A stretch of DNA of 64,000 nucleotides, taken from positions 1,270,510-1,334,509 of the forward strand of contig CAJFCJ010000007.1 in the NCBI GenBank assembly GCA_904063045.1, in the 5' to 3' direction. A program made the position numbers and the translations under genes. The DNA comes from Dimorphilus gyrociliatus. Lineage: Eukaryota; Animalia; Annelida. Each line of letters begins with the position of its first letter. Position 1 is the first letter of the stretch. The notes under the pieces were generated by a model that saw nothing but the letters and a program-made list of their open reading frames with translations, searched no databases and was not told the DNA's origin. Positions 31,824 to 61,689 of the stretch are shown piece by piece.

Positions 31824-33489
31824 ATGGTAAGATAATTAGAAACGACACCTTCATGTTATAACCCATATACTAATACGATATCTATTTCTACAGCGACGCG
31901 ATCTATCTGACGAAGTTAATGAATTCAATTTCTATTCAATAAAAAGTAATATTGAGATAGTTGAATGCCAGCCAATTTTTTGTACATTGATAGAGCTTGT
32001 AAAAATTGGCGATTTGGCAACGTCAAAGCATCTTTTGAGTAATGAAACTATAAATAATAAAGAAGATTTATATCTTGTATGTAGTGAAGAAGCAATTACG
32101 TCAAATCAAAAAGACATGTTTATTTTCTACGTACATAAAAGGGTTTCACTTTTCGAAAGACAACGCCGATTTAGAAAACATATCGATAGTCTTGATCATT
32201 TCTTTGACAAAATGGCTTCCGAACTGATAGAGAGAGGGAAGGCATCATGGTTAAAATTTTTACGTGTTGCTCTGGGACAACATCTTAGTAGACGTAATCC
32301 CGAAAATTTAGAAAAACAACTACAAATCGCCGTCTCTAATAACCAAAGATCCTGTTTTGATTTGCTATTGAATGAATGTAACGGAATATTTGGGAAAGAT
32401 ACTTACGGTATCATTTTAAGAAGTGGATTCTGCGATAAGCTTAAAATTTTAAAAGATATCATATCTTCCGTATTGTTTTATCATTCTAAAGTTATCTCTA
32501 AAATAGTCTATTTATGCCTTAAAGCAAACACTTGTTTGGATGACATAAAATCAATTATACCATTCGATAGATTGAGCAACGAAACCGTTCAAAGCCTATG
32601 TTGTATTGCAATATCTTTGAATAGATTCGATTTTTTCAAATATTGCATAATTGAGAAAAAATGCGATCTATCCGACGATTTAATCCACAATACGTTAAAT
32701 CTATCAAGCGAATTGCAATTTTTCGATCGTTTCCCGAGAAGATACAAAAAGTACTTTGAAAGAAAATTGATTTTGAAGAAAGATACACTAGGATTAGAAG
32801 AGCTAAAAATTCTAACAAATCCACCTATTTTACTTTCTCTTATGAAAACTAAAGAATTTGATGATTGGCAATATTTAAAAAATATTATCTTCAAATATTT
32901 GTTTGTCAGGGAAGGAATAATCTTAGATTCGAAGGTGTCTTGGGAAAGGAAACGGCAGAGTTTGGAAATATTTTGCATATTGATCCATTATAGTGAAAAC
33001 AAACAGGGATTACAACAACAGGACGTTGATTCGGCAATCAACTCGATCATTCAAGCCTCGAATAATTCATACAGGAGATCATTTGTAAAGTATTGTGCAA
33101 GATTAATTGCAACGCTATATCGGTATGGTTACGGCTTACACGAAATAGCCAATAGTTTCGTCTATAGGTACTATTTCCTAATTGAAGATGCACATCAGCT
33201 ACTATTCAAGACAGTTCTTGCGGGATGCTCCCAAAAGAATTACAATTTATTAATGGAATCTCATACCACTTGTTTTACGGTTATGCCATTGTGGAAAATG
33301 TGCAGAATAGTAGTTAGGAATGCAATTCGTAAGCCTTATACTAAAAATCTAAATCATATGATGAAAATGGAGAATCTACCATTTTTTATTGAAAAACTCA
33401 TGAACTTTGAAAAGGAAATGGAAAGTATAGACATTCAAATTATAGATTTTTCAATTATCAACGATATTGTTCACATTTATAACTTGTAA
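31824..33489 (+). CDS. SOCS/BC-box family member 1 (ATG-only exon 31824-31826 + exon 31894-33489)
   Basis: ATG|GTAAGA...TTTCTACAG gives a phase-0 join into the 500-aa ORF. C-terminal motif MPLWKMCRIVVRNAIRKPY...LPFFIEKLM. Confidence 0.82.
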
Positions 33490-34222
33490 AATTTTTTTGA
33501 ATGAAGATTATTTCTATATTATTCTATACAAACAAGTAAACAACCGTAAAGAGCTTGTGTTTCCATTTGTTCTAGAAATTCTCTTATTATTTCGATTAAG
33601 CGTGAAGAGTCTTACAGTTGATTAAATTCTTATTGAAACTGTTATTAAGCTAAAAATATATGAAAATAATGTTAATTAAAGGGCGTTAATTCTTATATAT
33701 ACAATATAGATAAGTATTTTGGCCTATACATGTGTTTTTTTTTTAATTATATAACCGGATGTAGTATTATAACCTTAATTTAGTACTACCAATTGTTATT
33801 TTAGAATAAATTAACATAATAGTTAATAAATTAACTTGTTATTATTTTTATCACATTTTTGACGAAAAGTTTAGTGAAATATTTATTTTCTCTACTTATT
33901 AAAAAGTAATTGTTTCGTAGATATTCCCACTCCTATCTCATTTAATTTCCGTAAAATTTTACTCTAAGTAGTTGGACGAGACGCCATATATAAATAGAAA
34001 TATATTTTCATTAAGACTTTATTTACTTTGGGAAAATATACAAAAAAAAAATTACTTAATCATCATTTTCTCATGTTTTTCATATTATTTACAAACGGAT
34101 TTTAGTTAGCCTGACATATGCAGTTAAGTTTTCAACGAAACCTTGACTAACGCTTTACTCTCTTTAAAAGTAGAGGAATTGTGATTAAATTTGACTTTCC
34201 ATCTCAAATTATCAACTCCAAT

Positions 34223-36074
34223 ATGGTAAGTAAATTTGAATTTGTTAACATAATTGAAGTCAAGAGAGTCTAATACATTCATTAATTAGGAAAAGGCTAG
34301 AGAAAACCAAAAGGGTGAGAAAACAAGGTCACAAAGCAGTATTCAAGAAAAATTAAGTCAACTTGCCGAAGAAGGCGATTTAAATTCTATTATGACTTTC
34401 GTTGCTAATTCGCCTAGTTCAACTAGAGCGAGATACATCACAGTGTGTTTGAGAGAGCTAGCCGAGAGGGGTAATGAAATTACCTACCGACTCCTAATCA
34501 AGAGGACATTTGGCGAATTTCGTGCGAATCTAGAGGCAAAGTATGATGTTCTTGCAGCAATAAAACTTCTTAAAGCTTTTTATGAAACCGTATCTGTCGA
34601 TGTAATTTACATAGATAGGTCGTCATTTTTGAATATAATCAAAGAGGAAGCCTTAAAACTTGTCAAGCCTGGAAAAAAACTACCTAGTATAAATTGGGAA
34701 TTACATAAGGCAATTGCGTGCAAGATGAAACATTGTTTTTCTGCTGCAGTAAAATGTTTCATAGAAAGCAAAGATTGGGGAGCAATTTCTCTTATTTTAA
34801 GATCCAACTTTAGAGAAAAAATCAGCTTATGTGAAAGAATTATAGCAGAAATCCAAACAGAATATGATATAATGTCAAACGTTATACGCAAGTGTCTAGA
34901 GAACAAAGTAACACTTAAAGCTCTTGTTAAAATTATTCGCTTTGACCTATTGGATACGGAGAGTAGGAGGAAACTATTTTGCTCAGCTTTGAGTGAAAAT
35001 CGACCAGAAGTTATTCATTTTGGCATAAAAGAAAATTTATTCAAGTTGCAAGGAGATTTACTAGTTTTAACTTTCTCTTCTGAATGCTTTGAAGAATTAC
35101 TAAACAGCTATTTCGATATATACAGAAATTATATACATCAACTATTAACTGGTCGTTTTGGGTGTTGCTCGGACAGTAGGGCTTTACATTATCTAGTTGA
35201 TCCAAGAACTTTACAGATACTTTTCAAGCACAAAGAATTCGATAATAACCGAATCTATAAAGATGAAATGTTTAGATTCTTATTTGTTTCTTGCGAAAAT
35301 TTACTATCCCCATTCACTTGTATGGAAAATCGTTATACGGCTGTTTCAGCTTTTTGTATATTGCTTGATTATAGTAAAAACATTGGCGGACTCTCTCAGG
35401 ATGTTATCAATACCGCCTTTTCTACGATAGTTTTCGCTAATGGTACAAAATTCGAAGAATCTTTAGTAAACTTTCAAATATACGTCACCACAACTATGAC
35501 ATCACACGGTTATACTTTTACCGAATTGGAATTGTCTCAAGAATTTTTAGATGGCTTAAAAGGAAGTAAAAAACTTTCCAACTTATTAGATCTACTAATC
35601 GAAATATCGGATCAAACCCATTTCAATATCTTCAATAGGAAAATTAAAGGCAACAATACTATCATGACTTTAAAGGGAATGGCGAGACGAACTATAAGAC
35701 GGCATGTGAAAATACCATTTCGAAGAAATTTAAAACGTTTGATTAGACAATATTGTTTACCGTTTATTATAGAGCAGCTGTTAAATCTACACAATGAATT
35801 TGCTGAATTGGATGCACATCCAATCAAATTCGAAATAGACGATCAGGAGGGAGTAACGTTTGTCGACGAAGATGAGGCTATCGCTTCTCCCGACTTTATT
35901 CTTATAGAGAACTTTAGTTTTTTTAGAGATATAAATTGTTATTGCGTTAATAATAATAATAATATCATTGTTGAAGAATTCCCGCCATATCCAATTGAAC
36001 CGGAGGTTGTTGCGCCTGCAGTTCAGGAAATCGAACAAGAAGATCTTACAAAATTTTGCGAAGCATTTGTATAA
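34223..36074 (+). CDS. SOCS/BC-box family member 2 (ATG-only exon 34223-34225 + exon 34290-36074)
   Basis: ATG|GTAAGT...TTAATTAG joins in frame. Ankyrin-like start LSQLAEEGDLNSI; motif MTLKGMARRTIRRHVKIPF...LPFIIEQLL; acidic tail. Confidence 0.85.
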
Positions 36075-37655: not shown

Positions 37656-37658
<3 letters not shown>

Positions 37659-37695
<37 letters not shown>

Positions 37696-37704: not shown

Positions 37705-38239
37705 TATGTTCCCTTTTGCTCTCTCTCTCTCTATCTCTCTCTTTGTAATTGGTGGCCTTGAATCATTGCAATTTTGCAACATTTCTTCTCAGCAACAAAA
37801 TATTAAAAACAAAAAAATGTTTAGAATTTTTTTGAGAATCAAAAACAAATGAACGATGATTTTCGTAGATTTAGGCAATCTGTTTGTTATTATTATCTAC
37901 TTAAAACAATAACTTCAATATATATCTGAGAAATTTTGATGCTTTTATTCTAAAATATGGTAGAACAAAAATAGATACTTTTTGCTGAATGTTATTACTA
38001 GAATGTTTCAATTTTTATTTATTGTATTATGTGAAAGGTAATCTGTATTTTATAGAACGGTGGAGCATCTAGTTACTATTTAGTTTACATACTTTTAAGT
38101 TTTTATAATGGACACTAGATGGCTCTGTCTATTGGGTGGGAAAGTATAGTGTTTTGTCGAATGATAACTGGTAATTTTGTTTAACCGTCAAGTATTGTCG
38201 CCCAAGTAGTCTTCTTCGCTCATATTGTAATACTTAACA

Positions 38240-39957
38240 ATGGTAAGTTGTTAGAATCGCAACGAATGCAACTCGTTACTGACTTATACTTATTTCAGTC
38301 AGATCGTCCAAAGATTCTGAGCCTCTCTGATCTAGCAAAGGATGTGCTTCGTAATATTGCAATCGGCACTTTGTTAGAAGGAATTAGAAAACGTGATTTG
38401 CAAACCATCAAACAAACGATAAAGGATTATAACAACAACAAGAAAACTCTGAAGATAATCGATAATTCCGTTCTTCTCAGATGTTTAAAAGAGGCAGCCG
38501 AACAAGATAATGAAGAAATTTTTACGCTCCTCTTGAGATGCGAAGTAGGCTCTAATCTTCGTGGAAAAAGAGGAAATCGCTCATTTAAATGCCTTTATAG
38601 ATGCATAGCTCTGCACTTGATCAGATTAGGCAGAAAATACCTTTTGAAAAAGCTGCTTGAATTTACAGAAGGAGTTATTAATCCGAACAGAGAACCACCA
38701 TCAACAAATAAGCTTTTGAGAACAACATTAACTTTGGGCAGGCACGATTGTTTTCGAATTCTTCTAAACCATGTACAAGTTACAGAGAATAAAGAAGCTT
38801 TTGTCATAGTACTAAATAGCCCATTGGAAGACAAAGTTGAATTGTTTAAAAATATGCTTTCAAGAATGATTAAGGATGAAGATAGAGATCAAGCAATTCT
38901 AAAATATTGTCTGTTGGAAAATATTAGTACAGAGAACTTGAAATCCGTTCTACCATTTTTCTCATTATCAAGAAGAGGAAGAAATCATCTTTGTCATTCT
39001 ACCTTACTAAGTAATCATAAAGATTTCTTTAAATTCGCTGTAAAAGAGAAAATTTTCTCTTTTCGAAAGGAGCACGTGTACGATACTCTCTTTTACGAGT
39101 GTTCTTTTCTGGATGAGTTGTTGGAAGATTATACAACATATTATAAAGACTATTTAGATAAATTCTTCCTCCCTGTACAAAAATTCTATATTCTTCGTCG
39201 ACCATCAAAACTATATACAATCTTCACACACGATAAATTTGTTAATCAGTGTCAAAATCATATAAATGCTCTATTTGGAGGATTATTTAATTTAAACAAT
39301 TCATTTTCGGCAGATTTGGCTTGTAGAGTATGGAATATTCGTCAAATGTGGTTGACATCATTTTGTTTATTAATTCATTTTAGCCATAATCCAATTGGTT
39401 TATCTACAGACGCTATTAATCGCATGTTTGCTTGCTTGATTACGTTCTTTCTAGATGATGTTGAAACTTTAACATTTTTTGGATCACTTATAGCAACTGT
39501 CGTTTGGTATGGTTATACATACGATAACTTAACTTTAAATAATAGTTTCTTTTGGGCAATTGATGAGAAAAGTAGCTATGCATATTTTTACGAATTGTTA
39601 TTATGCATATCCGATCAAAAGTCTTTCAATCATTTGGTAAAAAGCAGAAATGGTCCTGTTTTTGTTATGCCACTCAAGTCTATGGCTAAATGGTGTGTAA
39701 GAAAGCAAATAGGGAGACCTTTTCCTCTTAGAGCTAAAAAATTGGTGGAAGATAGTAAATTACCTTTCGTTGTTACTAGTCTTCTCAATCTCGAAAAGGA
39801 AATGGAAAGCTTAGGTTTTCACAGGATTGTATTCACAGTTAAAGATGGCGAAGTAATCTTTGAAAAGAATTGTTACGAGAGTTTTGATAACGAAACAGAT
39901 ATTGGTGATGAATCTTACGATTCAACAAGTACTTTAACTAGCGAAGAAGAGTTTTAA
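38240..39957 (+). CDS. SOCS/BC-box family member 3 (ATG-only exon 38240-38242 + exon 38299-39957)
   Basis: ATG|GTAAGT...TATTTCAG is a 56-nt phase-0 intron. Motif MPLKSMAKWCVRKQIGRPF...LPFVVTSLL; acidic tail. Confidence 0.85.
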
Positions 39958-39980
39958 ATGAATTGTCAGTCTTTCACTCT

Positions 39981-40024
<44 letters not shown>

Positions 40025-40979: not shown

Positions 40980-42563
40980 ATGATAAAACTAGATTATTTA
41001 TTAAACCTTATTAAAGAAGATAATATAGAATCGTTGCATTTGATATTGTGTAATGGGTTAGAAGACACCAGTAGCGACATTTTAGGAAAATGTCTACAGG
41101 AATCTGCTAGGGAAAAAAGAGAAAAAATTTTTTATCTATTATCTGTCAGTTGGATTATCCAGATAAGTCGAAATTTATGCGACGAGGATCCGTTTATACC
41201 TCATTCTCCTGATAATCAACCAGCATATTTAAGCGAGTTTGCTGAACAATTGATCAATAACTTTCAAGAAAGGTTATTCTTTTTTTATAGAATTGTACAA
41301 AAGACTTTGATGACCAAAGAGCCAAATTCGTCTAATATCTCGCAAGAATTGTTGAAAAGTCTTTTAAAAGATGCTATTCACGATAAGAATTCGGATAATT
41401 TGGAAAATTCATTCGGGAATGAGCAATTGATATTGATTCTCTTTAAAAATGTTGTTAAACGAAATGATAGAGGCTGCTTAGAGATAATGATCAATTCAAA
41501 AAGAGTTGTTTATATTGCAGAGATTTTTCCAATCATACTTAAGAGCGATTTAGAAGATAAATTCGATATTTTTAAGAGAATGACAGATATTCAGCAATTT
41601 AAGCACATTAACGTCCTTGCAATTTTAAGAAATGCTATTTATAGACAGGTTAAAATTGATGTTTTGAAGAAGATTTTACCACTTTATAGATTTTCGGCAC
41701 CTGAAAAAAGAGTTGAATTGTGCAATGCAATGCTGTTGAATTCGTCTCTTGATCTTTTCCTCTACGGAGTAGGCCTAAATTTGTATGAGTTTACCGAAGA
41801 GAGTGCAATTTTCTCTATTAAAACGCCAAATCTTCCGTATTTAAAAGGTTTAATGTATAAATTTACAAACGTTTATAAGACTGCTCTGGAGAAACTACCA
41901 TTTACTATTAGTTTTAGAGTTACTTATGGCCTAATCTCACCACAGCACTTGGGTGTCATTTGTAGTCATCCACTCTTTCAAGACGACAGGAGATATTTGA
42001 ACATGTTCTTCTTAATTTTCTTCAAACCTAGGAATTTCTTCAATCTGGCTATTTATAGTTCATCTAGGCTAATTGCCCTACTGGAAGCGTTTTGGATTGA
42101 ATTAGAAAACAGTTCAGATCTACTTGGCCTCTCTCAAGAAGTATTAAACTCCGCCGTCTTATGCTTATTGAAAGATTTTTCATGTCCAAATGCTATTACC
42201 TATAGTAGAATAATTAGTGTTTTCCTACAAAATGGCTATTTGCTAAATGGTTTTAGTATTCCCAAAGAGTATCTAGATCGTAATAACGAGAAGAGTAAAA
42301 TTCAACAATCGTTACTGAACCTTTTACTGGAAAGCGCCGATCAAAGACAATATAATGAATTTATGCTTAAATCTGACGGAATCAATACCATTATGTCTTT
42401 AAAATCGATGACCAGATGGCTACTTAGAAACTTAATAAAAAGACCGTTCAAAGTCAATCTGAAGCGAATGATTAAAAGTCGTCACCTCCCTTTTTCTCTT
42501 GAATCTATTATTGCATTGGAAAAAGAGGCAAACTGTTTTGAAAGTTTGGTTTCACAAAATTAG
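40980..42563 (+). CDS. SOCS/BC-box family member 4, 527 aa, single coding exon
   Basis: Uninterrupted ORF with family motifs GLSQEVLNSA, FLQNGY, DQRQYN and MSLKSMTRWLLRNLIKRPF...LPFSLESII. Confidence 0.85.
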   Translation: MIKLDYLLNLIKEDNIESLHLILCNGLEDTSSDILGKCLQESAREKREKIFYLLSVSWIIQISRNLCDEDPFIPHSPDNQPAYLSEFAEQLINNFQERLFFFYRIVQKTLMTKEPNSSNISQELLKSLLKDAIHDKNSDNLENSFGNEQLILILFKNVVKRNDRGCLEIMINSKRVVYIAEIFPIILKSDLEDKFDIFKRMTDIQQFKHINVLAILRNAIYRQVKIDVLKKILPLYRFSAPEKRVELCNAMLLNSSLDLFLYGVGLNLYEFTEESAIFSIKTPNLPYLKGLMYKFTNVYKTALEKLPFTISFRVTYGLISPQHLGVICSHPLFQDDRRYLNMFFLIFFKPRNFFNLAIYSSSRLIALLEAFWIELENSSDLLGLSQEVLNSAVLCLLKDFSCPNAITYSRIISVFLQNGYLLNGFSIPKEYLDRNNEKSKIQQSLLNLLLESADQRQYNEFMLKSDGINTIMSLKSMTRWLLRNLIKRPFKVNLKRMIKSRHLPFSLESIIALEKEANCFESLVSQN

Positions 42564-43103
42564 TATAAATATTAATATAGGACCATTTATTTCCTTGTTA
42601 AAATAGTGAAATTTCTGCTGAAACTTAACAAAAAAAGAAAAGAAAACAGATTAGAGATAAACAGCACTCACTCTTATCATTTTCATTGTTTTGTTGTTTT
42701 ATTTTTCCTTGATTTTATCATATTAAATCTTCAGTTAAAAACAAAAGAAACTATCTATCTATCTTTTTATCTAGCTCTCTCTGTCCCTGTTATTTTTGGA
42801 GAATATAATTTAATTAAAACTTGAAAAAAGATAAAAGAAGAGAAACAATTGTTTTCGTTATGGAAATTTTTATATTTGTACAAATAGGTTCTTTTTCTTT
42901 TTTTCCTATAGAAAAAAGAAAAGATAAGATAATTAAGAAAAAGAATGAGAAAGAGTGAAAAAAAAAAAAGTTTCCTTTCTAATTAACTTTTGCAGATTTG
43001 TTAGAAAACAACTTGGCAAATTATTTACAATTTGAAAATATACATTATATAATATATGATTGTTTTTTTCTTTCTTTCTTTTTTTTTTCTTTCTTCCTTA
43101 TAT

Positions 43104-46493: not shown

Positions 46494-47366
46494 TTGAGAT
46501 ATTAAATATCGAAGATAAGATACAGATAGTGAATTTTTTTTCTTAAAAAGTATAAATAAGAATTTATCACTTTCATTCCTAGGTTGAATTATACTCCGGA
46601 GAGTATCCTCTTCCTAGAAAAATAAAAAAATACTATACTTTTTGTATTTCTAAGAAATTTAGGGACGATATATAAAAAATATGGAAAAAAATAAGAAAGG
46701 AAATATATACGCACGTTTTCTGCATTGCAGATCTTTTGTAAATTTATATTGTCCATATCATCCTCTTCATTTAATTTACTCCCAAAACAATTTTCTAAAT
46801 ATTTTGTTATCGGTTTTGCTAATTTATTCATATTCTAATTAAGTGATAAAGATATTCTTTAAACTATATAAACTTAAAAAGGGAATTGATGCTTGTAAAC
46901 GAGAATAACCAAAAAGTCAAAAGGAATATAAAGATGAATAGTTGATTACATATGCAATTACAAAGTATATATAACAACTGTATAAGTAACCTTTGTTTAT
47001 ATATCGTATATATTGTATAAAAAAAGATTATTCACCATATAAAAAAGGTGTCAACGACTTTCGTTCAGAATCGTCTGGGTCAGCAGTTCTAGTTAATTAC
47101 ACATACAGTATATGTCTATATACATTAAATATACTGTATATGGTACATATACATATATTCAGATATTTAGATATATTCTGTGTGGATATACGAACTTTTT
47201 ATATGAACATTTAGCAACAGAAAGTGTTTTTATTTGAGTAAATGTCAGAAGAAAGTAAACTCGGACTCGGTGAAACACTATCCCTGTGTAGCAATGTAGA
47301 CCTTCTTTTTGCAATAAACTTTGATATTTGATTGGAAAACACGAATAATTATTACATAATTTTATA

Positions 47367-50503: not shown

Positions 50504-51150
50504 CTTCTGCTCATTCTCCTTCTCCTTCCTCTTCTTCGTTTTAACAAAGTAACCATTTCATATTTTGATCTAATATATTAAAATAAATAGTTTAACCAAT
50601 AAGATCGACTTCGATCAGTGATTGGTAATACAATACTTTTTATACATTTTTCTTAAATTGTATTTAATACGACCTTCAACCAGAAGTAAAAATAATTCGT
50701 AGCTATTATTTTATTGTTTTATATTAGTCTGATATCTAAATATACAATAAATACATATTTCCTACCTTTCAAATTGTAGATATTTGATTTATATTCTGCA
50801 TTTTGTTATCAAATATAGATATTATCCATGCGGTTTCTTTTTTTCAATCAAAATAGCTTAGGAACGATTTTAGTCAACTTGATATTATGTAAAGGAAGAA
50901 GAGAACAAAAGTGCCGTTTGTTTTTACTTTTGAAACAGCTAAATTGAAAAAAAAAATAACAGTAGATCGAAAATAGCGACACCTTGTGTTTCCATTGTAA
51001 ACCACGGAGATTAAACAATCATATACTAAAATGTGTGGAAATGTTTGGTTTGAAATATTTTTTATCCACCAGGGGTGCTACTGTCTGTTTTTTACTGTTT
51101 AAAATATTTATGAACCGTCTTGACTTTAGCATTCTCTGTTAAACTAAAAA

Positions 51151-52939
51151 ATGGAGATTCAAAAAGAAGTTGAAGAAATACTATTCAATTTAATAGATAA
51201 TAATGATATTAGAACTTTACAATCAAATTTAATAGAAGGAAGAGGTAGTATCAACGATATTACATTATTGAAATGTATGGAAAAATCGGTTATCGAGAAT
51301 AAATGGGAGATATTTGAATTATTCTCGTCATCGTGGATTTATCAAATATTCAGCGTGACCAGAATACGTAGAGAGTTCTTCCAGGTTCAAGGGGATTATT
51401 CAACAGGTTAGAATTTCTATTAGTTTTAACAAATAGTTTCTAATCCGTTCGAAAATTAATAATAAACCAAAATAACAACATTTTTTTATTGTCCAAAAAG
51501 CCTATGAATACGATAAAAGTGTTGACGAACTTTGGTTGGTATTGAAAAACTTTTATGACAAACTCTTAGATAATTCAGAATTGAATCAAGCCGATGAAGA
51601 ACTTATTATTTTGAAAGAAAGTATTCTACCCAAATTGGAAATGATTATCAAGATAAGTAATCATTCTACAAATCAAAAATTAATTGGATCTGAGAATGGC
51701 GAAGAGCAAAATTGTCTTGTTGTCAACTCTTTGCGTTTGCTTTTGAGGTGTACGAATTGTGATAATAATATGGAAAAGATCAACGAATTGACAAATAAGC
51801 TTAGTGTTCAAAAGAATCCTGAAATATATGAGTTGCTTTTGAATAGTAATTTAAAAGCCAAATTTGCAGTTATTAAGAAAATGCTTGAAAATAGAAGGAA
51901 GAATGATATTAACGATTCAAGTTTAATTGAAAGTTTATCGAGATTTAAAGCACCATTGTATTCAGTTGCGACTATGCTAAAATTAATGACTTTTAACGTG
52001 GAAGAGAAGGAAAAGATTGGCGAAATATTTCTAAGGAATAGAGCGGAAGAACTATTCCAATATGGAGTTAAGAAAAATATTTTTCCTTTTACAATAAGAG
52101 CAGCACTTACGTCGTTAACGTGGAGCAATAGAATATTAAACAATTTTATTGATGATCATTTCTCAATCTATAGAGAACTTTTTAACAACAATAAGTTATT
52201 TATAATGAAAGATTATGATATTCCTAATCCAAATGCTATTCTGAAAGCTTTCAATCATCGCCGATTTCAAGATTGTCAACAAATTAAAAGTTTCTTTTTT
52301 AAAAATCTTTTCCAAGATCAAAATCTTTCGAATGGTCTTGTAGATTCAATTCGACACGGTAACGAATGGTTTACAGCTCTTTTTGCCGTAACTATCGGCT
52401 ATGATATGGGACTTCGACTGTCGCAGGGTGTCATAGATTTCGCATTCACTCAATTGTTAAACGGTTCGTCTCTACGATCTAAACATCATACTGCGTGGAA
52501 CTCAATTGATTATACTTCTCAAGAAGTTTTCTGGTGTTGTAGACTGCTTGTTACAATAATCTGGTGTGGATATACATTGTCAGATACGAATAACTTGAAG
52601 AATCTTTACGAAAAAACAAAAAGTAACTGCTCAGGTAGTGATACATTTGATCGCCTCTTGCATTTTATTGCCAATTCTAGTCAAAAACAATTTAGTTTCC
52701 TTATGCGAATTGCTAATAGAAATCACGAAATAATGACTCTAAAATCAATGGCAAGATCGACAATCAGATCAGAATTAACTAAACCATTTAGAAGAAATTT
52801 GGCGATTTTGTTGGATAAATATCCACATGTACAGTCGGACTTTATTAATTTGGAAAATGAAATAGTGGATTTAAAATTGGAAAGAATTAAATTCCGAATA
52901 CTTAACAATAAATTCCGCCTTATTCATCCAAAATTATGA
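51151..52939 (+). CDS. SOCS/BC-box family member 8 (exons 51151-51406 and 51501-52939)
   Basis: A 94-nt phase-1 intron (ACAG|GTTAGA...TTTTTTTATTGTCCAAAAAG|CC) fuses the 86-aa and 467-aa ORFs in frame. Motif MTLKSMARSTIRSELTKPFRRNL. Confidence 0.75.
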
Positions 52940-53534: not shown

Positions 53535-54932
53535 ATGGCAGCAGAGATTGGGTATCCTGATAAGAACGTAAAATTATCAACGATTTGGTATTATATTGAA
53601 AATGGGAAGACATGTTCATTGGAGAGTATTCTATGTTATCATCCTAATAAAATTAAATCATACGATTTAGCAACCTGTATAATAAAATTAGCGTTGAAAG
53701 CCGATTCTGATGATTATATAGACAGCGAAATAGAGAGAATTTTCTATTTACTCTGTACAACATGGATTCTATTAGTTATTAAAGATCCTTACGTTCAGAA
53801 TAGTTTTAAAGAAAACGAAAAAGGAATCAAAATACCTGTACCATTTAAAGTCAGAGATTTTATAGCTGCTTGGTTTCATTCTGCTTTTAAGGAAATAAAA
53901 GAACATTTCAGAGAAGAGAAACCTCTATTTAAAAATCTGCTTAATTTATTAGCAATAGCACCTAAACAGGTGACTAATGAGACGATCAGGAAACTTTGGC
54001 CCTTGTATTTTGCAAATGGGACACTCCTGTATGGTATTAGAGATAAGGCGTTAAAGGAGAACGATCAAGTTATCTTAATGATTATTAGTAAATATGACGA
54101 GAAAATATTTCATTCGTATGCCGTGCTTTCAACAGCAATTTCCAAAGATACTCAGTCGGATGACAGCAGAAGAGGATGGAAAAGATCAGCCAATGGGAAT
54201 TTATGTTTAAAAGATAGTATTAAAATGTTTAAGGCAAAATATTTTAATGCAGTTTTAAAATCTGAAAACGAAAGAGAAATTGAAGTCAACTGTTTTAGAT
54301 CTATTGTTAAAATAACTACACTGCTGATAGGAATTCTTCATCCAGACTTTTTAAAAAAGTTCATCACTTGGATTCATCGGGAGAAAATCTACAATCATCT
54401 TTGGGAAATTCAATTAATAAAAGCATGCCTAAAAGTTAGGAAAATAAAAGTTGATTTATCAATAATTTCACTCAGAGTCATTACTGAAACTCTACTTTAT
54501 TTTCAAAGCAAAAAATTATGGTACTCTACTTATCAAAATCTTCTATTCTTAGCAGTTAGGTGTGGATTCTATCTTGATGAATTGCAAATTCCAGAAGAGA
54601 ATTTACAAGGAATAGCTAGTCATTTTCAATGCTCCATTGAAATGCTGTTAAGTGATCGTTCTTATTATAGACTCATGAAAAAATTGGGAAATGTTGTATC
54701 TCCTTTATCTTTAAAAACTATAGCAATTTATTCTATCAGAAAGAGCATAAAACCGCCTTTCTCTATAAATTTTGAACGTTTAGGAGGTTATGATATCTCT
54801 CCAGGAATATTTGACCTTCTAAAAATTATTGACATAGAAGATGATACACAGAACTCCAAAACACGAAACGATGTTGTGAATAATTTTGATTGTTTGAGAA
54901 ACAAAACTAATAAAATTTTTACGATTATTTGA
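53535..54932 (+). CDS. SOCS/BC-box family member 9, 465 aa
   Basis: The most canonical BC box of the set, SPLSLKTIAIYSIRKSIKPPF. Shares AVRCGF and WPLYFANG with members 10 and 12. Confidence 0.85.
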   Translation: MAAEIGYPDKNVKLSTIWYYIENGKTCSLESILCYHPNKIKSYDLATCIIKLALKADSDDYIDSEIERIFYLLCTTWILLVIKDPYVQNSFKENEKGIKIPVPFKVRDFIAAWFHSAFKEIKEHFREEKPLFKNLLNLLAIAPKQVTNETIRKLWPLYFANGTLLYGIRDKALKENDQVILMIISKYDEKIFHSYAVLSTAISKDTQSDDSRRGWKRSANGNLCLKDSIKMFKAKYFNAVLKSENEREIEVNCFRSIVKITTLLIGILHPDFLKKFITWIHREKIYNHLWEIQLIKACLKVRKIKVDLSIISLRVITETLLYFQSKKLWYSTYQNLLFLAVRCGFYLDELQIPEENLQGIASHFQCSIEMLLSDRSYYRLMKKLGNVVSPLSLKTIAIYSIRKSIKPPFSINFERLGGYDISPGIFDLLKIIDIEDDTQNSKTRNDVVNNFDCLRNKTNKIFTII

Positions 54933-55031: not shown

Positions 55032-55634
55032 ATGCAGAATACGAAGCTTTCCTTTCGTTGTCACGAAGAGAATTTAACTTTCGAGGAATGTTGCAGCAAT
55101 TTAGCGTCTATTCATGAATATGATGTAGCGATTAATCTAAAAGAGGTTTTAACCGAAGTTTCAACCAGGAATGATAAAGAGAACTGTGAAGCAGATTCTT
55201 TTGCCTTACGGGAGATGGATTATCACTCTTGTAAGATTTTACTGACTTCTCTCATTATTAAAATATGGAATAAAAAGTACACTGAACATTCTTTGCAAAT
55301 GATTGATTGTAATTATAAAACTTTGAGATTTCATCCTATACAAGAGGAAGTTGAATATCGTTTCCAGAATATTTCGGTCGATATCAGAAATTGGTTTTTA
55401 TATGTTTTTGAGAAAGTTGCCAATCTGGAAATTACGGATACTATTTTTAACGATATTATTAAAATTATGCTAGAACCTTTCGGAGAAAATCTTGATTGGC
55501 CGGAACTCTACAAAAATGGCAAAATCTTATCTTATTTGCTTTATATTGCAATGAAAAACAACGATGAAGATATCGTCCAATTACTAACGGAAAACATTAG
55601 TTTGTATACAAAACAATCTTCTTTATTTCAATAA
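55032..55634 (+). CDS. Truncated family member 10, 200 aa, N-terminal half only, no SOCS/BC box
   Basis: DIRNWFLYVFEKV and WPELYKNGKILSYLLYIAMKNNDEDIV align with members 9 (FIAAWFHSAFKEI; WPLYFANGTLLYGIRDKALKENDQVI) and 12 (HIDDWFTSVYERV; WPKLFASGALLMKIREKAFNDHDQML). Only ~180 bp remain before member 11. Confidence 0.65.
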   Translation: MQNTKLSFRCHEENLTFEECCSNLASIHEYDVAINLKEVLTEVSTRNDKENCEADSFALREMDYHSCKILLTSLIIKIWNKKYTEHSLQMIDCNYKTLRFHPIQEEVEYRFQNISVDIRNWFLYVFEKVANLEITDTIFNDIIKIMLEPFGENLDWPELYKNGKILSYLLYIAMKNNDEDIVQLLTENISLYTKQSSLFQ

Positions 55635-55812: not shown

Positions 55813-57526
55813 TTATAGTGGAAATAATTCTTGCGGTTCAAGATAATCGCTGAAATTTATACATCTTTCAATTTGTTGCGGAAGTTTGAAAACGCTTGTC
55901 AATTGTGTAAGATTCTTCCGGAAAGGCTTCTTAATATTACGTCTAATAGCTATTATTGCCATATCTTTTAATGGCTTAACTGACTTTTGTTCGTATAGCT
56001 TCAGAGTGATTTCATTGTAGTTCTTTTGATCGGACATAACTAATATTGAATTTATTACGTAGGAAATAACATTTTCCTTCCTCAAAGCATTCAAAAACGT
56101 ATTCGATAAGTCGAGATTTTTGAAAGTATACCCATACCAAGTCAACATTGACAAAAATGTCAATGAAGTTTTGACAAGAGATTTCATATTGACATTCTCA
56201 GATGTAAATTTCCCGTTGTTTATAATACGATTTATAGCGTAATCAACGACATCCTGCGAGAGTCCCACGGCATTATCACTACGAGAGATAATATAACGAA
56301 AGGCCTTTAGAAATTCATTAACAGACGATGAGATATTAGCCGACGACATGAGAAGTCTAAAAAAAAAGTTTTTAACATTTGCATTATGATAAAATCTTTT
56401 ATGATAGAAGACAACTTTGACACTTTTCAACGAGGGAAAACCTTTCGCTTCAAAATCATTAGACTGAAATAATTTCTGATAAACTTCACCGTAGCAGCTA
56501 AGCAAAGAGCACAATACTTCTTCGTCGTTGATAATACTTTGCAGAGCTAAATTTACGGTAAATTGATAATTTTCTTTCAGAAAATTCCAGACGGTTCTCG
56601 ATTGATTTTCAGTAGGATAAATCTTTCGAAATTTTTCACCAATTATAGCTATATGCACTATTTCGTTGTAATGATTAGATACGTCATCCTGATATTTATA
56701 CGAAGGCTCTATTCTACTTGCTTTTCTAGTTGTAAGATTTTGAAAAAAGCTAAACTTATCTGGATAATTGCATGATAACACCAAATAAAAGCTATATCTA
56801 ACATGTTGTAGTTTCTTTGAAGTCGCGATCACTTCCAATAGATATCGATTCTTTGCAACCAAAGCATAGGTTAGGAAAGATAGTAAAATCCTAACAGCAT
56901 CTTTATGATTTTTAGACCATTGATTATCAATATCTCCAACAATTGTAGTTAAGAATAATCTACTGAACCATTCGGGAGATTTATTCCATATAGATATATT
57001 CGCTGATCTAGTTGGTTGGTAAAATCGGTTTCGTTTATCCTTTTCCTTTGAATTGGAAGTTTGATACGTGTGAATAGTCTTAATGACTTTCCCAAACCAA
57101 TTATTCAACCAATTGTCAGTTATCTCCCTTAGTATATCAATGTTCCTTTGAAGATACCTCGAAGTATCATAAATATCGTTTCCACTTAAGTCAATTATTC
57201 GACAAATATACGCGACAGATAATAAATTGAATATTCTTTTGTTAGACTTCAAGAACGATTCCCTTGTCGATATAAAGAAAACCCAGTCACTAATATCATC
57301 ACGTCTCGTAGTTAAAATTTCTGATATGGCTTTCTCATCATTTAAATCTATACATTCCGTAAAAGTATTTAAATCCTTTTGTTCTTGGTCGGTGAGAGTC
57401 TCCTTCTTGATATCTTCATTGTAACTCTGCAATGGAAAAGTTAAGTTAAAAAATGTTTCATTAATATACGAAATAAGTGAACCGTACATTAGTATAGAAA
57501 AGTCTAAACATTTCCCTTTTCAACAT
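55813..57526 (-). CDS. SOCS/BC-box family member 11 (probable exons 57526-57488 and 57426-55813)
   Basis: Strong acceptor TTTTCCATTGCAG at 57427 with a phase-0 donor at 57487. Motifs GLSQDVVDYAI, LTWYGY, SDQKNYN and KPLKDMAIIAIRRNIKKPFRKNL...LPQQIERCI. Confidence 0.8.
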
Positions 57527-57981: not shown

Positions 57982-59442
57982 ATGGAGGCTTACCAAAGAG
58001 AAACACAACTAAAAATCATTGAGGAGGATGTACTATGGCCAATAGTTGAGAAAAGAGATTTTGAGCAACTTTTTTGTCTTATAGAAGATAAAGAATTAGA
58101 CATTTCCGTGTATAGTCTAGCAGTTTGTATTAGAAGACTAATTTTGGGAGGAAATAGCATGATTATTGATAAAATAATGAAAAGGTTTGATATTGAGAGG
58201 AAAGAGAAGATGTTCCTCGCTTTATCAATAAGTTGGATAGCTAGAATATTTCGAGAAAAGTATGTTCAACATCAGGCTGAGATTATGGTTCCCAACGAAT
58301 TTAAAAATTTACATGTTCACGATGAGACTATATTCCAACATATTGACGATTGGTTTACTTCTGTTTATGAAAGAGTTCACAGGCATAGTTCAGAAGAGCA
58401 CACCCTCTTCTTTGACCTTATGTGCAAATTTATGCAGCCTCCTTCACCAGTTCCCTGTATAAACGCTATAACTGTTTGGCCAAAATTGTTCGCAAGTGGA
58501 GCATTACTAATGAAAATTCGAGAGAAGGCTTTCAATGATCACGATCAAATGCTTGTAACGATTATGGAGAGGAACGAGCGCTTTCTGCAAAAAGTTGTCG
58601 TAAACAATATAGTTAGTAATAATGCTGATATCTGGTTAAATGATAATTTTGCGCTGTCAGTTGTACCAATTGTAGAATGGATGAATCACGTTACTTTTGC
58701 TGAAACGCTTAACGCCGAAGGTGTATCGGACCTTTTATTTTTATCAAAGGTTGTAAATAGTCCATTTAATCAGTTCCTAGAAAGGAAAAGAGAATCGTCC
58801 AACACTCGTGTAACCCTATGCAGAACTTTGGCAAATAGAGAAAGAAGTCGAATGAATACGCTCGTAAATATTATCAGAATTCTTCCAATTGACTACGTCG
58901 ACAAAATTTTGAATCTCTTCTATAATAATATATTCAGCATGGACGAATGGGAGAGATATTTGATTGGTATAATCGGAACGCTAAACGCAAATTACGATCT
59001 TAGTTTCGTATCAATGAAATGTATTTCAATAGTAATATCGTTTCTTATGAAAGATTTAAGCTATTCATGGGATAAAGTAACTGTTGCATGCACAAAACTT
59101 TTGGCTCTTTTCATTAAAAGTGGATACCTCTTGGATAATTTAATTTTACAACCAGATAAATATCTTAGGTTGTACCTTCATTTGGGATGCGAACTTTGGG
59201 AAGTTTGTTCTCAAAAAACGTTTCATAAAATAAAATCAAGTTCTTATATCTTCCCTATGCCACTTGTTGGAATGAGTAGAAACGTTATTCGTCGTACGAT
59301 TAGAAAACCATTTATGGACAATTTGAAACTAATCGGGGAACAGTTCAACTTACCACCCTATGCTCAAGATCTAATTTCGCTTAAGACAATCTACGAGCCA
59401 ATTTTGATACCTTGTAAGATGAAACAATTCTCACCGAGTTAA
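57982..59442 (+). CDS. SOCS/BC-box family member 12, 486 aa
   Basis: Motif MPLVGMSRNVIRRTIRKPFMDNL...LPPYAQDLI. Subfamily of members 9 and 10. Confidence 0.85.
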   Translation: MEAYQRETQLKIIEEDVLWPIVEKRDFEQLFCLIEDKELDISVYSLAVCIRRLILGGNSMIIDKIMKRFDIERKEKMFLALSISWIARIFREKYVQHQAEIMVPNEFKNLHVHDETIFQHIDDWFTSVYERVHRHSSEEHTLFFDLMCKFMQPPSPVPCINAITVWPKLFASGALLMKIREKAFNDHDQMLVTIMERNERFLQKVVVNNIVSNNADIWLNDNFALSVVPIVEWMNHVTFAETLNAEGVSDLLFLSKVVNSPFNQFLERKRESSNTRVTLCRTLANRERSRMNTLVNIIRILPIDYVDKILNLFYNNIFSMDEWERYLIGIIGTLNANYDLSFVSMKCISIVISFLMKDLSYSWDKVTVACTKLLALFIKSGYLLDNLILQPDKYLRLYLHLGCELWEVCSQKTFHKIKSSSYIFPMPLVGMSRNVIRRTIRKPFMDNLKLIGEQFNLPPYAQDLISLKTIYEPILIPCKMKQFSPS

Positions 59443-59910: not shown

Positions 59911-59953
59911 TCATCATCACTATCATCATCATCATCGTCATCATCGTCATCAT
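59911..59953. repeat. (TCA)n imperfect trinucleotide microsatellite
   Basis: Direct reading. It lies in the probable 5' intron (59892-60036) of member 13. Confidence 0.85.
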
Positions 59954-60048
59954 GATAAAAACATATACAGATTTATCTTGAATAATAAATATCGAATGAC
60001 ATCTTGTGGGAATAAATAATTATTTTATTTTAATAGGCTAAAATCCTT

Positions 60049-61689
60049 ATGGATATGGATAATTTGTCAAATTGCATTAAATTTGATGATATATTTTCAA
60101 TAAAGTCAATTCTTTTGGACGGTAAGAGACTTAGCGCTTCGATCTATTTGAGTTGTTTAACTGAGGCTCTGCTATTAAGGAAAACATATATATTCAAAAT
60201 TCTCGGAGTTGCCTTCGTAACGCAAATGATTGATAGCGAAGATATTGATCCGATAGTTTCTAGAGATAAATCCGAATATAAATTTAGTAAAGCAAGGGTA
60301 AATAGTTGGTTAATTTCAATTTATAGAAGTATAATGAGAAGAATAAGATTTACAAATTGTACAAAAGATGAAATTTATAATGAGCATAAATCGAAAGAGG
60401 ATGAAATATGGAAAATATTAGAGAATCTATTAGATGAAGAATATTCAAATATTTTTCATGAGAATAGAATTAATAATTATGATTATGTTAAATATATATT
60501 TTGGTTAATGAACGAAGCCCTTCAAACAAACGATCAAATATGTCTCCTTATAACAACGAAATCTAAACGATTAACATTCGTTACGGACAGCTATTATTTA
60601 CTTATTAAAAGTAATTTTACAAATAAAGAAGAGCTTATAAATAAAATGGTATCTTTTCGAAGTATTTACGATAATAGTTATTACGAAGTTCTTAAAGAAA
60701 TTTCATCTGATAAGACGATTATAAAAGAAATTGAAATACAGAAAATCTTTTACTGTATAAAAATACCAGCAAAACAAAAAATGGAATTATGCGAAACGGC
60801 AATTATCAATCCAAATATAGAATTTATTAAACTTGCCGTTAAAAGTAATTTGTTTATTTTTACAAAGGCTTGCGCATTTTATATTATATTTCGACAATTT
60901 GATATTCTCTCCTATTTCTTGGACTATTTTCCAAAGGAATTTGTTAATTTTTTCGATCAAGCCCACTATTTTATAAACAAAGTTAACCTATTTCCCTATT
61001 CTTCTAGTTTGAAAATATTATTTGAGCATAAACTATTCAAGAAAAGTCGCAGATGCCGTAATTTCTTTTTCGATCTTCTATTTCAACCTAACGTCTTTCT
61101 ACCGTCGATTAAGAGGATTGGCGATAATGGTAATGAATTATTGAATCTATTGGATCTTGTATTAGCTCATAGCGAAACCATTGGCATCTCTCAATCTATG
61201 GTCGACATGGCATTTTATTATATTGTAAACGATTCTAGAAATCTGGACTTTGAATTAACTTTTTTGCTGAGTTTCGAAGATTTGAATTCGAGTTTTTATT
61301 TCAGAGGTAGAATACTAGCTACACTTATATCTTACGGCTATACATACTCAGTATTAAACCTAACTCATGGATTTATAAAAAAATTAGAGACAAATCCCTT
61401 GCAGCGCCATCTCTTTTCAATGTTAATAGAAATTTCAAATCAAATTCAACATTTCAATATATTTAGAGTATTCTTTGGAAAGTCTAAAATTCAACCACTA
61501 AAGTCAATGGCGAGGTTTATAATTAGAAAAAATATACCTAAACCTTTCAAACTTAATTTGAGAGCTTTTATTAATCATTATAATCTATCAAAATCCAATA
61601 TGTTCAACATACTTGAACTAGGAAGCGAAATAAGTTGGCTCGATACGAATGAATGTAAGAATAATCTATTACATTATTTTATAGATTGA
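60049..61689 (+). CDS. SOCS/BC-box family member 13, 546 aa
   Basis: Motifs FEHKLF, GISQSMVDMAF, LISYGY and QPLKSMARFIIRKNIPKPFKLNL. Confidence 0.85.
   Translation: MDMDNLSNCIKFDDIFSIKSILLDGKRLSASIYLSCLTEALLLRKTYIFKILGVAFVTQMIDSEDIDPIVSRDKSEYKFSKARVNSWLISIYRSIMRRIRFTNCTKDEIYNEHKSKEDEIWKILENLLDEEYSNIFHENRINNYDYVKYIFWLMNEALQTNDQICLLITTKSKRLTFVTDSYYLLIKSNFTNKEELINKMVSFRSIYDNSYYEVLKEISSDKTIIKEIEIQKIFYCIKIPAKQKMELCETAIINPNIEFIKLAVKSNLFIFTKACAFYIIFRQFDILSYFLDYFPKEFVNFFDQAHYFINKVNLFPYSSSLKILFEHKLFKKSRRCRNFFFDLLFQPNVFLPSIKRIGDNGNELLNLLDLVLAHSETIGISQSMVDMAFYYIVNDSRNLDFELTFLLSFEDLNSSFYFRGRILATLISYGYTYSVLNLTHGFIKKLETNPLQRHLFSMLIEISNQIQHFNIFRVFFGKSKIQPLKSMARFIIRKNIPKPFKLNLRAFINHYNLSKSNMFNILELGSEISWLDTNECKNNLLHYFID

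What the first reader, a model, noticed from the sequence alone, without database searches (positions are those of the whole stretch)
31824..61689. 30-kb array of 13 fast-evolving SOCS/BC-box genes: a candidate undescribed E3-ligase receptor family
Seen in the sequence: twelve long ORFs that look unrelated at first share an ordered set of motifs. These are an N-terminal helical L..I..ND...L / LL.C..EA / IF.LL..SWI segment, a central IL.S...DK, HxxF, G[LI]SQxx[VIL][ND]xA, LxxYGY, [DS]QxxFN, and a terminal [PST]LKxM[ACS]RxxIRxxIxxPFxxNL...LP. Established: [STP]LxxxC/A/SxxxL/I/V followed by a downstream LP is the Elongin BC-binding SOCS/VHL box of cullin-RING ligase substrate receptors. Inference: this is a lineage-specific expansion of substrate receptors, with a conserved ligase-docking end and hypervariable ankyrin/helical-repeat-like substrate regions. 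That parallels the nematode and plant F-box expansions linked to pathogen defence. Extreme divergence with intact frames suggests diversifying selection.
Basis: partly seen in the sequence, partly recalled or inferred. Interest (0 to 1): 0.9.

Follow-up and report, generated by a model that had tools for sequence, protein, structure and literature searches.

The report
Worm-specific ankyrin-like SOCS-box gene cluster
A 30-kb stretch of the miniature annelid Dimorphilus gyrociliatus holds 12 old, very divergent copies (plus one truncated copy) of a gene whose protein looks like an ASB-type adaptor that hands targets to a ubiquitin ligase; it is a new branch of a known kind of protein, not a new kind.

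Summary
A 13th gene is a conserved copy with only the N-terminal part.

The SOCS/BC-box reading is supported, but only by sensitive methods.
- Pfam SOCS_box is the only family that recurs among 28 box pieces (8 of 28). One paralog on the same D. gyrociliatus scaffold passes Pfam's own cut-off (25.3 vs 23.5 bits).
- The isolated box model is closest to the ASB9 SOCS box, pVHL and SOCS1.
- The whole-protein model is closest to ASB8, ASB9, ASB3 and ASB10.

The family is therefore a sequence-orphan relative of the ankyrin-repeat-and-SOCS-box (ASB) receptors. An exhaustive search of 1.84 billion proteins gave only 24 hits. The hits I traced lie in D. gyrociliatus or in unnamed Logan samples taken here as related worms.

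"Fast-evolving" and "diversifying selection" are not supported as general claims. Nine of the 12 genes have a 1:1 ortholog in an unnamed related species, and those located lie in conserved order. Synonymous sites are saturated and dN/dS is 0.06-0.34. Protein rates do differ about tenfold between neighbours.

Elongin BC and cullin binding are inferred, not shown.

The scan had already noted the continuation of this cluster just past the window end (s1-080755, s1-082652).

The parts
31824..33489 (+). Gene 1: ATG at 31824-31826, a short intron, then the main exon (ORF 31987-33489). SOCS-type box at 33271-33423. The only window copy with the canonical BC-box Cys (PLWKMCRIVV).
   Evidence: ATG|GTAAGA donor; the annotated product P0001 starts MRRDLS. 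Pfam SOCS_box 12.8 bits, E 0.14. Ortholog P0002 is 69% identical.
34392..36074 (+). Gene 2. Box at 35652-35804 (TLKGMARRTI ... LPFIIEQLL). The annotated model P0005 adds 35 N-terminal residues.
   Evidence: The ortholog in L001 (P0015) is 46% identical with dN/dS about 0.29. The ortholog's box scores 18.1 bits on Pfam SOCS_box over model positions 2-38 of 39.
38239..39957 (+). Gene 3: ATG at 38239-38241, a 56-nt intron at 38242-38297, then the main exon. Box at 39655-39807.
   Evidence: A spliced RNA contig of run X2 shows the intron (donor checked). The ortholog is 82% identical with dN/dS 0.06. The box model has pLDDT 86.
40980..42563 (+). Gene 4, a single exon of 527 aa. Box at 42381-42533. 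This is the protein modelled in full.
   Evidence: AF2 model with pLDDT 78.6 and pTM 0.70. Best structural matches are ASB8 at Z 10.2 and ASB3 and ASB10 at TM about 0.5. Covered by contigs of X2 and X1.
43104..44657 (-). Gene 5. Box at 43125-43277. Convergent with gene 4.
   Evidence: Ortholog P0006 is 86% identical, with dN 0.08 and dS 0.97. Covered by contigs of X2 and X1.
45012..46613 (-). Gene 6. Box at 45033-45188, degenerate (SLFSIARWKT, no LP). The true start probably lies in an upstream exon.
   Evidence: Sister P0018 is 54% identical.
47721..49424 (-). Gene 7, 567 aa. Box at 47871-48017.
   Evidence: Identical to database protein P0003.
51148..52939 (+). Gene 8: an upstream exon within 51148-51408 plus the main exon from 51476. 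Box at 52721-52867, with no LP motif.
   Evidence: The family HMM hits both pieces in order, at HMM positions 6-67 and 79-503. Sister P0012 is 69% identical.
53535..54932 (+). Gene 9, of the divergent g9/g11 subtype that lacks the central ILxSxxxDK segment. Box at 54693-54842.
   Evidence: Sister P0023, in syntenic contig L006, is 30% identical.
55032..55634 (+). The 13th gene: a 200-aa ORF with only the N-terminal module and no SOCS-type box.
   Evidence: Collinear with residues 81-198 of gene 11, E 1.4e-6. An intact 186-aa positional ortholog lies in the relative at L006:11844-12404, E 2e-20.
55813..57489 (-). Gene 10. Box at 55837-55989.
   Evidence: Ortholog P0016 in L006 is 39% identical.
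57982..59442 (+). Gene 11, of the g9/g11 subtype. Box at 59245-59397 (LPPY).
   Evidence: No counterpart in the relative's syntenic contig L006.
60049..61689 (+). Gene 12. Box at 61480-61635, with no Pro in the cullin-box position (NLSKSN).
   Evidence: Ortholog P0009 in L006 is 60% identical.

Best explanation
The cluster encodes a family, so far seen only in D. gyrociliatus and an unnamed related worm, of ASB-like substrate receptors for Elongin BC-cullin-RING ubiquitin ligases. Each protein has a short N-terminal helical cap, a variable insert, and an all-alpha solenoid with a period of about 30-35 residues. The solenoid superposes on ankyrin-repeat domains, although no ankyrin signal is left in the sequence. 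A C-terminal three-helix SOCS-type box follows. Its first helix carries the BC box ([SPT]-L-K-x-M-[AST]-R-x-x-[IV]), which should insert its Leu into Elongin C. It is followed by an invariant Pro-Phe...Asn-Leu helix and, in most copies, an LPxxhxxhh cullin box of the kind found in ASB9. Shown here: the family, its age, its transcription and the fold similarity. Inferred: that the solenoid binds a different substrate in each paralog and that the box recruits EloB/C plus Cul5 (or Cul2) and an Rbx protein to ubiquitinate it. The duplications are old. Positional orthologs in a related species are under purifying selection, so most copies probably serve stable endogenous targets. A few fast copies (genes 2, 9, 10 and the box-less gene) could do something else.
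For: Family reality. Lineage restriction: HMMER against 1.84 billion representatives gave only 24 hits. Organism: paralog P0020 lies on GCA_904063045.1 scaffold CAJFCJ010000007.1, whose length of 4,620,838 bases equals that listed for the window's own protein; an AFDB paralog is named DgyrCDS5896. Box evidence: Pfam SOCS_box is the only recurrent family, in 8 of 28 pieces. P0020 scores 25.3 bits against a cut-off of 23.5, E 1.8e-5, over model positions 3-38 of 39. The BC-box pattern is present in 29 of 32 copies. hhalign against four verified human boxes aligns the BC helix in register, P 8e-4. The ESM atlas returns SOCS_box clusters at 0.91, then Vif and VHL. The box model (pLDDT 86) has ASB9 254-294 as rank 1 of 48,161 chains, with rmsd 2.0 A over 40 residues; SOCS1, SOCS4 and many pVHL chains follow. 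Whole protein: ASB8 in its EloB/C complex is rank 1 at Z 10.2 over 191 residues running into the box; ASB9 scores Z 7.8 and K1, AnkX and DARPin also match. ASB3 and ASB10 top the atlas shape search at TM about 0.5 over residues 11-522. Transcription: a spliced contig. Constraint: dN/dS 0.06-0.34 for the full-length genes, and nine 1:1 ortholog pairs.
Against: No window gene reaches Pfam's SOCS_box cut-off; the best is 12.8 bits. Profile searches of PDB sequences found no SOCS-box protein. All structural scores for the 70-residue box are individually insignificant (Foldseek E above 2, VIA Z 3.5). Z 10.2 for a helical repeat lies within the range the tool warns can be a common arrangement. Pfam finds no ankyrin repeat at E up to 1. 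The BC-box Cys is replaced by Ala, Ser or Thr in nearly all copies. LPhP is absent in 0 of 32 copies, and six of the 12 window genes lack even the LPxxh pattern. No partner binding was tested. The presence of EloB/C and Cul2/5 in this genome was not checked.
Confidence: 0.7

Rival explanations
1. The proteins bind Elongin BC but many do not recruit a cullin. They would act as sinks or regulators of EloBC, or as scaffolds, rather than as ligase receptors. The box-less 13th gene would be a natural competitor for substrates.
For: LPhP is absent in all 32 copies. Six of the 12 window genes have lost the LPxxh pattern altogether. A review (PMC3355856) reports that SOCS1, with an incomplete Cul5 box, shows no detectable Cul5 binding. 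The box-less gene is intact in both species despite saturated dS.
Against: ASB9 and ASB7, verified, also lack the fourth Pro, and ASB9 assembles with Cul5 (PMC3779351). The pattern LPxxhxxxh sits 20 residues after the BC box in 23 of 32 copies.
Confidence: 0.12
2. The C-terminal motif is only a helical cap of a lineage-specific solenoid, with a chance likeness to a BC box. The family has nothing to do with ubiquitin ligases.
For: All single-sequence and profile-versus-PDB searches with window genes are below significance. Short three-helix units are common folds, and the VIA and Foldseek scores are weak.
Against: Independent methods converge on the same family: the Pfam recurrence plus one member above cut-off, language-model features, and three structure searches that put ASB or SOCS proteins first. 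The box is the best-conserved part between paralogs, with 40% mean column identity against 23% for the whole protein.
Confidence: 0.12
3. The family is an arms-race family (immune or conflict-related) under diversifying selection. The solenoid surfaces would track fast-changing pathogen or selfish-element targets.
For: Protein rates differ about tenfold among neighbouring genes, with ortholog identity of 30-86%. The genome paper says the few expanded families in this species are mostly local duplicates tied to immunity (PMC7854359), but it does not name this family.
Against: All duplications predate the species split, and no recent birth-and-death turnover is seen. Gene order is conserved. Pairwise dN/dS is below 1 everywhere, and 0.06-0.11 for genes 3, 5 and 12. 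No expression or infection data exist.
Confidence: 0.06

Closest known systems
ASB family (ankyrin repeat and SOCS box proteins; human ASB1-18; structures of ASB9 and ASB8 with EloB/C)
   Same: The order of parts is the same: a helical repeat solenoid followed by a C-terminal three-helix box. ASB proteins are the best structural matches for the whole protein and for the box. The cullin-box pattern LPxxhxxhh, without a fourth Pro, is also that of ASB9 and ASB7. Sizes are like ASB3 and ASB10.
   Different: No ankyrin repeat is detectable by Pfam. No sequence homologs were found beyond D. gyrociliatus and a few unnamed samples. The BC-box Cys is replaced by Ala, Ser or Thr. An invariant Pro-Phe..Asn-Leu helix is present, and the BC-to-LP spacer is four residues longer than in ASB9. 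Many copies carry a conserved tail after the box. The genes sit in a tandem array.
VHL-box receptors of Cul2 ligases (pVHL alpha domain; BC box plus Cul2 box hPxxhxxxh)
   Same: The Cul2-box consensus, placed 8-23 residues after the BC box (PMC3355856), is met in 23 of 32 copies at +20. pVHL chains are the commonest Foldseek neighbours of the box model, at TM 0.47, rmsd about 3.7 A and 21% identity. A Pro starts helix 2, as in pVHL.
   Different: The Pfam hits are to SOCS_box. The abundance of pVHL hits partly reflects how many pVHL entries the PDB holds. The body is unrelated to the pVHL beta domain. The consensus does not discriminate, because ASB9, a Cul5 partner, also fits it.
African swine fever virus MGF505/MGF360 multigene families
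   Same: They are tandem arrays of about 500-aa, very divergent, ankyrin-like proteins with a VHL/SOCS-box-like motif whose Cul2 or Cul5 type is unclear. MGF505-1R binds EloB and Cul5 (PMC13342108).
   Different: They are viral, not animal, genes. The residue numbers quoted for the motif (P18, F20) place it near the N-terminus there. No sequence relation was found here.
Expanded F-box and BTB/MATH receptor families of nematodes and plants
   Same: They are lineage-specific tandem expansions of cullin-RING substrate receptors with a shared docking motif and divergent binding domains.
   Different: They use a different adaptor system (Skp1/Cul1 or Cul3). Those families show recent turnover and positive selection, which this array does not.

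Membership tests
SOCS box (Pfam PF07525) | Scores above the Pfam gathering cut-off of 23.5 bits | tested here: inconclusive
   Window genes: no hit at full length, and the best fragment scores 12.8 bits (gene 1). Family-wide, 8 of 28 box pieces hit SOCS_box and no other family recurs. Paralog P0020 on the same scaffold scores 25.3 bits, E 1.8e-5, over model positions 3-38 of 39.
SOCS box / VHL box | BC box [STPA]-L-x-x-x-[C/small]-x-x-x-[LIVA] at the start of helix 1 | tested here: met
   Met in 29 of 32 family members. Column counts in 28 boxes: S/P/T 28, Leu 27, A/S/T/C 26, I/V/L 27. Cys itself occurs only in gene 1; Ala is the rule. hhalign puts the helix in register with ASB9, ASB7, SOCS2 and SOCS4, P 8e-4.
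SOCS box (Cul5 type) | Cul5 box LPhP with Pro in the fourth position (Kamura 2004, as quoted in PMC3355856) | tested here: not met
   0 of 32 copies. However, the verified boxes of ASB9 (LPED) and ASB7 (LPIA) lack it too.
VHL box (Cul2 type) | Cul2 box hPxxhxxxh placed 8-23 residues after the BC box (Mahrour 2008, as quoted in PMC3355856) | tested here: inconclusive
   Met in 23 of 32 copies, almost always at +20, but in only 6 of the 12 window genes (genes 1-5 and 10). The pattern also fits ASB9, so it does not decide which cullin is used.
SOCS box / VHL box | Three-helix fold that superposes on solved boxes | tested here: met
   The box model has pLDDT 86 with helices at 11-23, 27-37 and 43-56. 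VIA rank 1 of 48,161 chains is ASB9 254-294, rmsd 2.0 A over 40 residues, Z 3.5; SOCS1 gives rmsd 2.1 A over 39 residues. Foldseek returns pVHL and SOCS1, all with E above 2. The scores are weak because the unit is small.
SOCS box / VHL box | Binds Elongin C/B and a cullin | not testable with these tools
   No complex modelling or experiment was available. The presence of EloB/C and Cul2/5 genes in this genome was not checked.
ASB (ankyrin repeat + SOCS box) | Ankyrin repeats recognisable in the sequence | tested here: not met
   No Ank family hit at E up to 1 in any of the 12 proteins. No ankyrin protein appears in the profile-versus-PDB searches.
ASB (ankyrin repeat + SOCS box) | Ankyrin-type solenoid directly followed by the box, as in ASB structures | tested here: met
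   ASB8 scores Z 10.2 (model 272-515 against chain 53-288) and ASB9 Z 7.8 (238-514 against 25-294); K1, AnkX, RNase L ANK and DARPin also match. ASB3 and ASB10 give TM 0.46-0.51 over residues 11-522. Language-model neighbours include Ank clusters and ASB17. The Z value is within the range the tool calls possibly generic for helical repeats.
F-box / PRANC (Skp1-binding end of ankyrin proteins) | Match to an F-box or PRANC profile | tested here: not met
   No such family appears among the Pfam hits at E up to 10 for the 28 box pieces.

The most novel reading that the evidence does not exclude
The box is a functional variant (Ala in place of the BC-box Cys, an invariant PF..NL helix, no LPxP) that couples an ankyrin-like receptor array to a different cullin or partner than ASB proteins use. 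The fast-evolving copies, together with the conserved box-less gene, would form a receptor/decoy system engaged in genetic conflict, for example with a virus, a symbiont or between the sexes.
Probability: 0.12. Interest if true: 0.65.

Novelty: new member of a known kind. Interest (0 to 1): 0.4.

Why it matters
The D. gyrociliatus genome is famously streamlined. Its genome paper reports only nine expanded gene families (PMC7854359). A retained, transcribed array of more than a dozen ancient ligase-adaptor-like genes is therefore notable in such a genome. It gives a set of natural, very divergent ASB-like scaffolds with one shared docking end.

The work also shows that standard annotation misses the domain entirely: there is no Pfam hit on any window gene. 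Language-model and structure searches recover it. If binding is confirmed, the family would extend the known sequence range of functional BC boxes and ankyrin-like solenoids.

It is not a new mechanism. Lineage-specific expansions of cullin-RING receptors are well known.

Tried and rejected
- Pfam on the full-length proteins gave nothing relevant.
- Three profiles (whole family A1 and A2, box A3) searched against PDB sequences found no SOCS-box or ankyrin protein; only chance hits such as the STAT2 N-terminus appeared.
- The word-indexed homolog search found only the window's own protein and one ortholog.
- hhalign of the box profile against the SOCS2 box alone misaligned, with probability 3.6%. 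SOCS2 has a much shorter spacer.
- Foldseek with the whole model against PDB, Swiss-Prot AFDB and AFDB clusters gave only generic ARM, HEAT, PPR and importin matches at E about 1e-2 and TM below 0.27. I therefore dropped the ARM/HEAT reading once VIA-align and the atlas shape search put ASB proteins first.
- I first read the LPxxhxxxh motif as pointing to Cul2. I withdrew that once the verified ASB9 and ASB7 boxes turned out to share the pattern.
- F-box/PRANC was rejected, with no profile hit.
- The idea that ORF 55032-55634 is a pseudogene fragment was rejected, because an intact positional ortholog exists.
- Site-wise dN/dS was not attempted. Only two species are available and dS is saturated.
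- Paper searches found no description of the family, and the identity of the related species could not be established.
- Read laying allowed a single call, so only genes 3-5 have RNA evidence.
Full report
**What is there**

The window is AT-rich, about 30% G+C. Between 31.8 and 61.7 kb it carries 12 long ORFs on both strands.

They align end to end at 14-26% identity to the first. A family HMM searched against a six-frame translation of the window hits exactly these 12 ORFs, with E from 1e-73 to 1e-166. It also hits an 87-residue upstream piece at 51148-51408 that supplies the missing N-terminus of the eighth gene.

It is collinear with residues 81-198 of gene 11 (E 1.4e-6) and has no box.

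The genes are not strictly intronless.
- Gene 1 starts with an ATG at 31824 that is followed directly by a GTAAGA donor. The annotated product (P0001) begins M-RRDLS, as expected from that splice.
- Gene 3 has the same layout, and an RNA contig shows its 56-nt GT..AG intron at 38242-38297.

**Organism and spread**

A paralog (P0020) lies on GCA_904063045.1, scaffold CAJFCJ010000007.1. That scaffold's length, 4,620,838 bases, equals the one listed for the window's own protein. An AlphaFold DB paralog is named DgyrCDS5896. The genome is therefore Dimorphilus gyrociliatus, as earlier scan notes said.

An exhaustive HMMER search of 1.84 billion cluster representatives gave only 24 hits. The hits I traced lie in this genome or in Logan assemblies of a few related samples. 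At the sequence level the family is an orphan.

**Transcription**

Contigs of run X2 cover gene 3 in spliced form and genes 4 and 5. They leave the intergenic 40.0-40.6 kb empty. A coral metatranscriptome (X1) holds near-identical pieces of genes 4 and 5. Only this 6-kb stretch could be laid, because the tool allowed one call.

**Is the end a SOCS/BC box?**

Standard annotation says no.
- Pfam finds nothing on the full-length proteins.
- Profiles searched against PDB sequences find no SOCS-box protein.

More sensitive tests agree with each other.

1. *Pfam on the box pieces.* I scanned the 28 box pieces of the family one by one. SOCS_box was the only family matched by more than one piece (8 of 28). 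The piece from P0020 scores 25.3 bits, above Pfam's cut-off of 23.5, over model positions 3-38 of 39. The orthologs of gene 2 and another member score 18.1 and 16.9 bits.
2. *BC-box pattern.* It is present in 29 of 32 members. In 28 aligned boxes the first position is S/P/T in 28, Leu in 27, a small residue in 26, and I/V/L in 27.
3. *Profile-profile comparison.* I confirmed human box sequences against PDB chains (SOCS2 and SOCS4; ASB9 and ASB7). hhalign places the BC helix in register with them, P 8e-4.
4. *Language-model features.* Residues 462-527 of gene 4 are nearest to SOCS_box clusters (0.91, 184 shared features). Vif and VHL, both BC-box proteins, follow.
5. *Structure of the isolated box.* An AlphaFold model of the gene 3 box (pLDDT 86) has the ASB9 SOCS box (residues 254-294) as rank 1 of 48,161 chains, with rmsd 2.0 A over 40 residues. 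SOCS1 and SOCS4 also appear. Foldseek lists many pVHL chains and SOCS1.

Each structural score is weak because the unit is tiny, but the agreement is not.

**Which cullin?**

The published Cul5 signature LPhP is absent from all 32 copies. The Cul2-box consensus hPxxhxxxh, placed 8-23 residues after the BC box (PMC3355856), is met in 23 of 32 copies at +20, but in only six of the 12 window genes.

This does not decide the matter. ASB9 and ASB7 have the same LPxx pattern, and ASB9 assembles with Cul5 (PMC3779351). The cullin partner stays open. The ASFV MGF505 study reached the same impasse for its motif (PMC13342108).

**The body**

The full model of gene 4 (pLDDT 78.6, pTM 0.70) is all-helical, with helix pairs repeating every 30-35 residues from about residue 146 onward.

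Foldseek gave only generic solenoid matches. Two other searches were more specific.
- VIA-align, which does not lean on Foldseek, puts human ASB8 (in its EloB/C complex) first. Z is 10.2 over 191 residues, running from the repeats into the box. ASB9 scores Z 7.8, and vaccinia K1, AnkX, RNase L and a DARPin also appear.
- The atlas shape search puts ASB3 and ASB10 first, at TM about 0.5 over residues 11-522.

Language-model neighbours of the body alone include ankyrin clusters and ASB17. Pfam sees no ankyrin repeat. I read the body as an ankyrin-derived solenoid whose sequence signal has been erased. The tool's warning that Z below about 13 can be generic for helical repeats applies here.

**Evolution**

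A related species (Logan samples SRR23372228, SRR23372229 and SRR23372231; name unknown) has syntenic contigs.
- L001 carries the orthologs of genes 1, 2 and 3 in order.
- L006 carries gene 9-like, the box-less gene, gene 10 and gene 12 in the same relative order and orientation, then two further members. Gene 11 has no counterpart there.

In a maximum-likelihood tree, nine of the 12 window genes pair 1:1 with a non-window protein at 100/100 support. For six of the nine the partner was located in the related species' contigs. All duplications are older than the species split.

Synonymous sites are saturated (dS 1 to above 2). Pairwise dN/dS is 0.06-0.11 for genes 3, 5 and 12, about 0.3 for genes 2 and 9, and about 0.5 for the box-less gene. 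Ortholog identity ranges from 30% to 86%, roughly a tenfold spread in rate among neighbours.

Between orthologs the box is no better conserved than the body. Examples are gene 5 (0.69 vs 0.87) and gene 1 (0.56 vs 0.72). Between paralogs the box is the best-kept part, with 40% mean column identity against 23% overall. That is the pattern expected if all copies share a docking partner and each keeps its own long-standing target. It is not the pattern of a rapidly turning-over arms-race family.

**Verdict**

It overstates the novelty, because this is the ASB architecture. It is unsupported on diversifying selection and on pathogen defence.

I found no paper describing the family. The genome paper mentions nine expanded families, mostly local duplicates linked to immunity, without naming them in the held text. 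Binding to Elongin BC and a cullin remains an inference.

The scan had already flagged the continuation of the array just beyond the window (notes s1-080755 and s1-082652).

Noticed in passing
window 55032-55634 (+); L006:11844-12404 (-): A box-less 200-aa relative of the N-terminal module of gene 11 sits between genes 9 and 10. It is intact at the same position in the related species (186 aa, 29% identity, E 2e-20). It is probably a real short gene and possibly a natural competitor lacking the SOCS box, as the ASB9-2 isoform does.
   Followed up: partly
window 31824-31826 and 38239-38297: Genes 1 and 3 have the start codon as the last three bases of exon 1 (ATG|GTAAG), followed by a very short intron. 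The 56-nt intron of gene 3 is seen in an RNA contig. Gene 2 has an ATGGT[AG] 67 nt upstream of its open frame.
   Followed up: partly
window, about 20-25 codons after each box, e.g. 39808-39852, 35805-35849, 47826-47870: Many copies (genes 1, 2, 3, 7 and 8, and several relatives) share a further conserved tail after the box, of the form NLExEhExh..h..h.F.h. It has no counterpart in canonical SOCS boxes. It had lower confidence and no regular structure in the box model.
   Followed up: no
window 57982-59442 vs L006:8638-10001: Gene 11 has no counterpart in the related species' syntenic contig, between the orthologs of genes 10 and 12. This is either a gain in D. gyrociliatus or a loss in the relative.
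   Followed up: no
window 41958-43720 (run X1): A public coral metatranscriptome holds 99-100% identical contigs of genes 4 and 5. This suggests the worm, a common aquarium inhabitant, was present in that sample.
   Followed up: no
window 1165-1776, 3796-5150, 8038-11027: The left flank holds exons of unrelated genes: a protein kinase domain, a cortactin-like gene (six HS1 repeats plus SH3), and an ankyrin-repeat plus ion-transport exon pair that looks like a TRP-type channel.
   Followed up: no
L002:10001-10996 (GCA_904063045.1 CAJFCJ010000007.1, about 3.92 Mb): A solitary, shorter family member (P0020, 331 aa as annotated) lies far from the array, between an SLC12 transporter gene and a zinc-finger gene. 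It has the most canonical box of the family and is the only one above Pfam's cut-off.
   Followed up: partly
window 60001-64000: G+C falls to 0.237 over the last 4 kb. No long ORF follows gene 12 within the window, although earlier notes place more paralogs shortly beyond the end.
   Followed up: no
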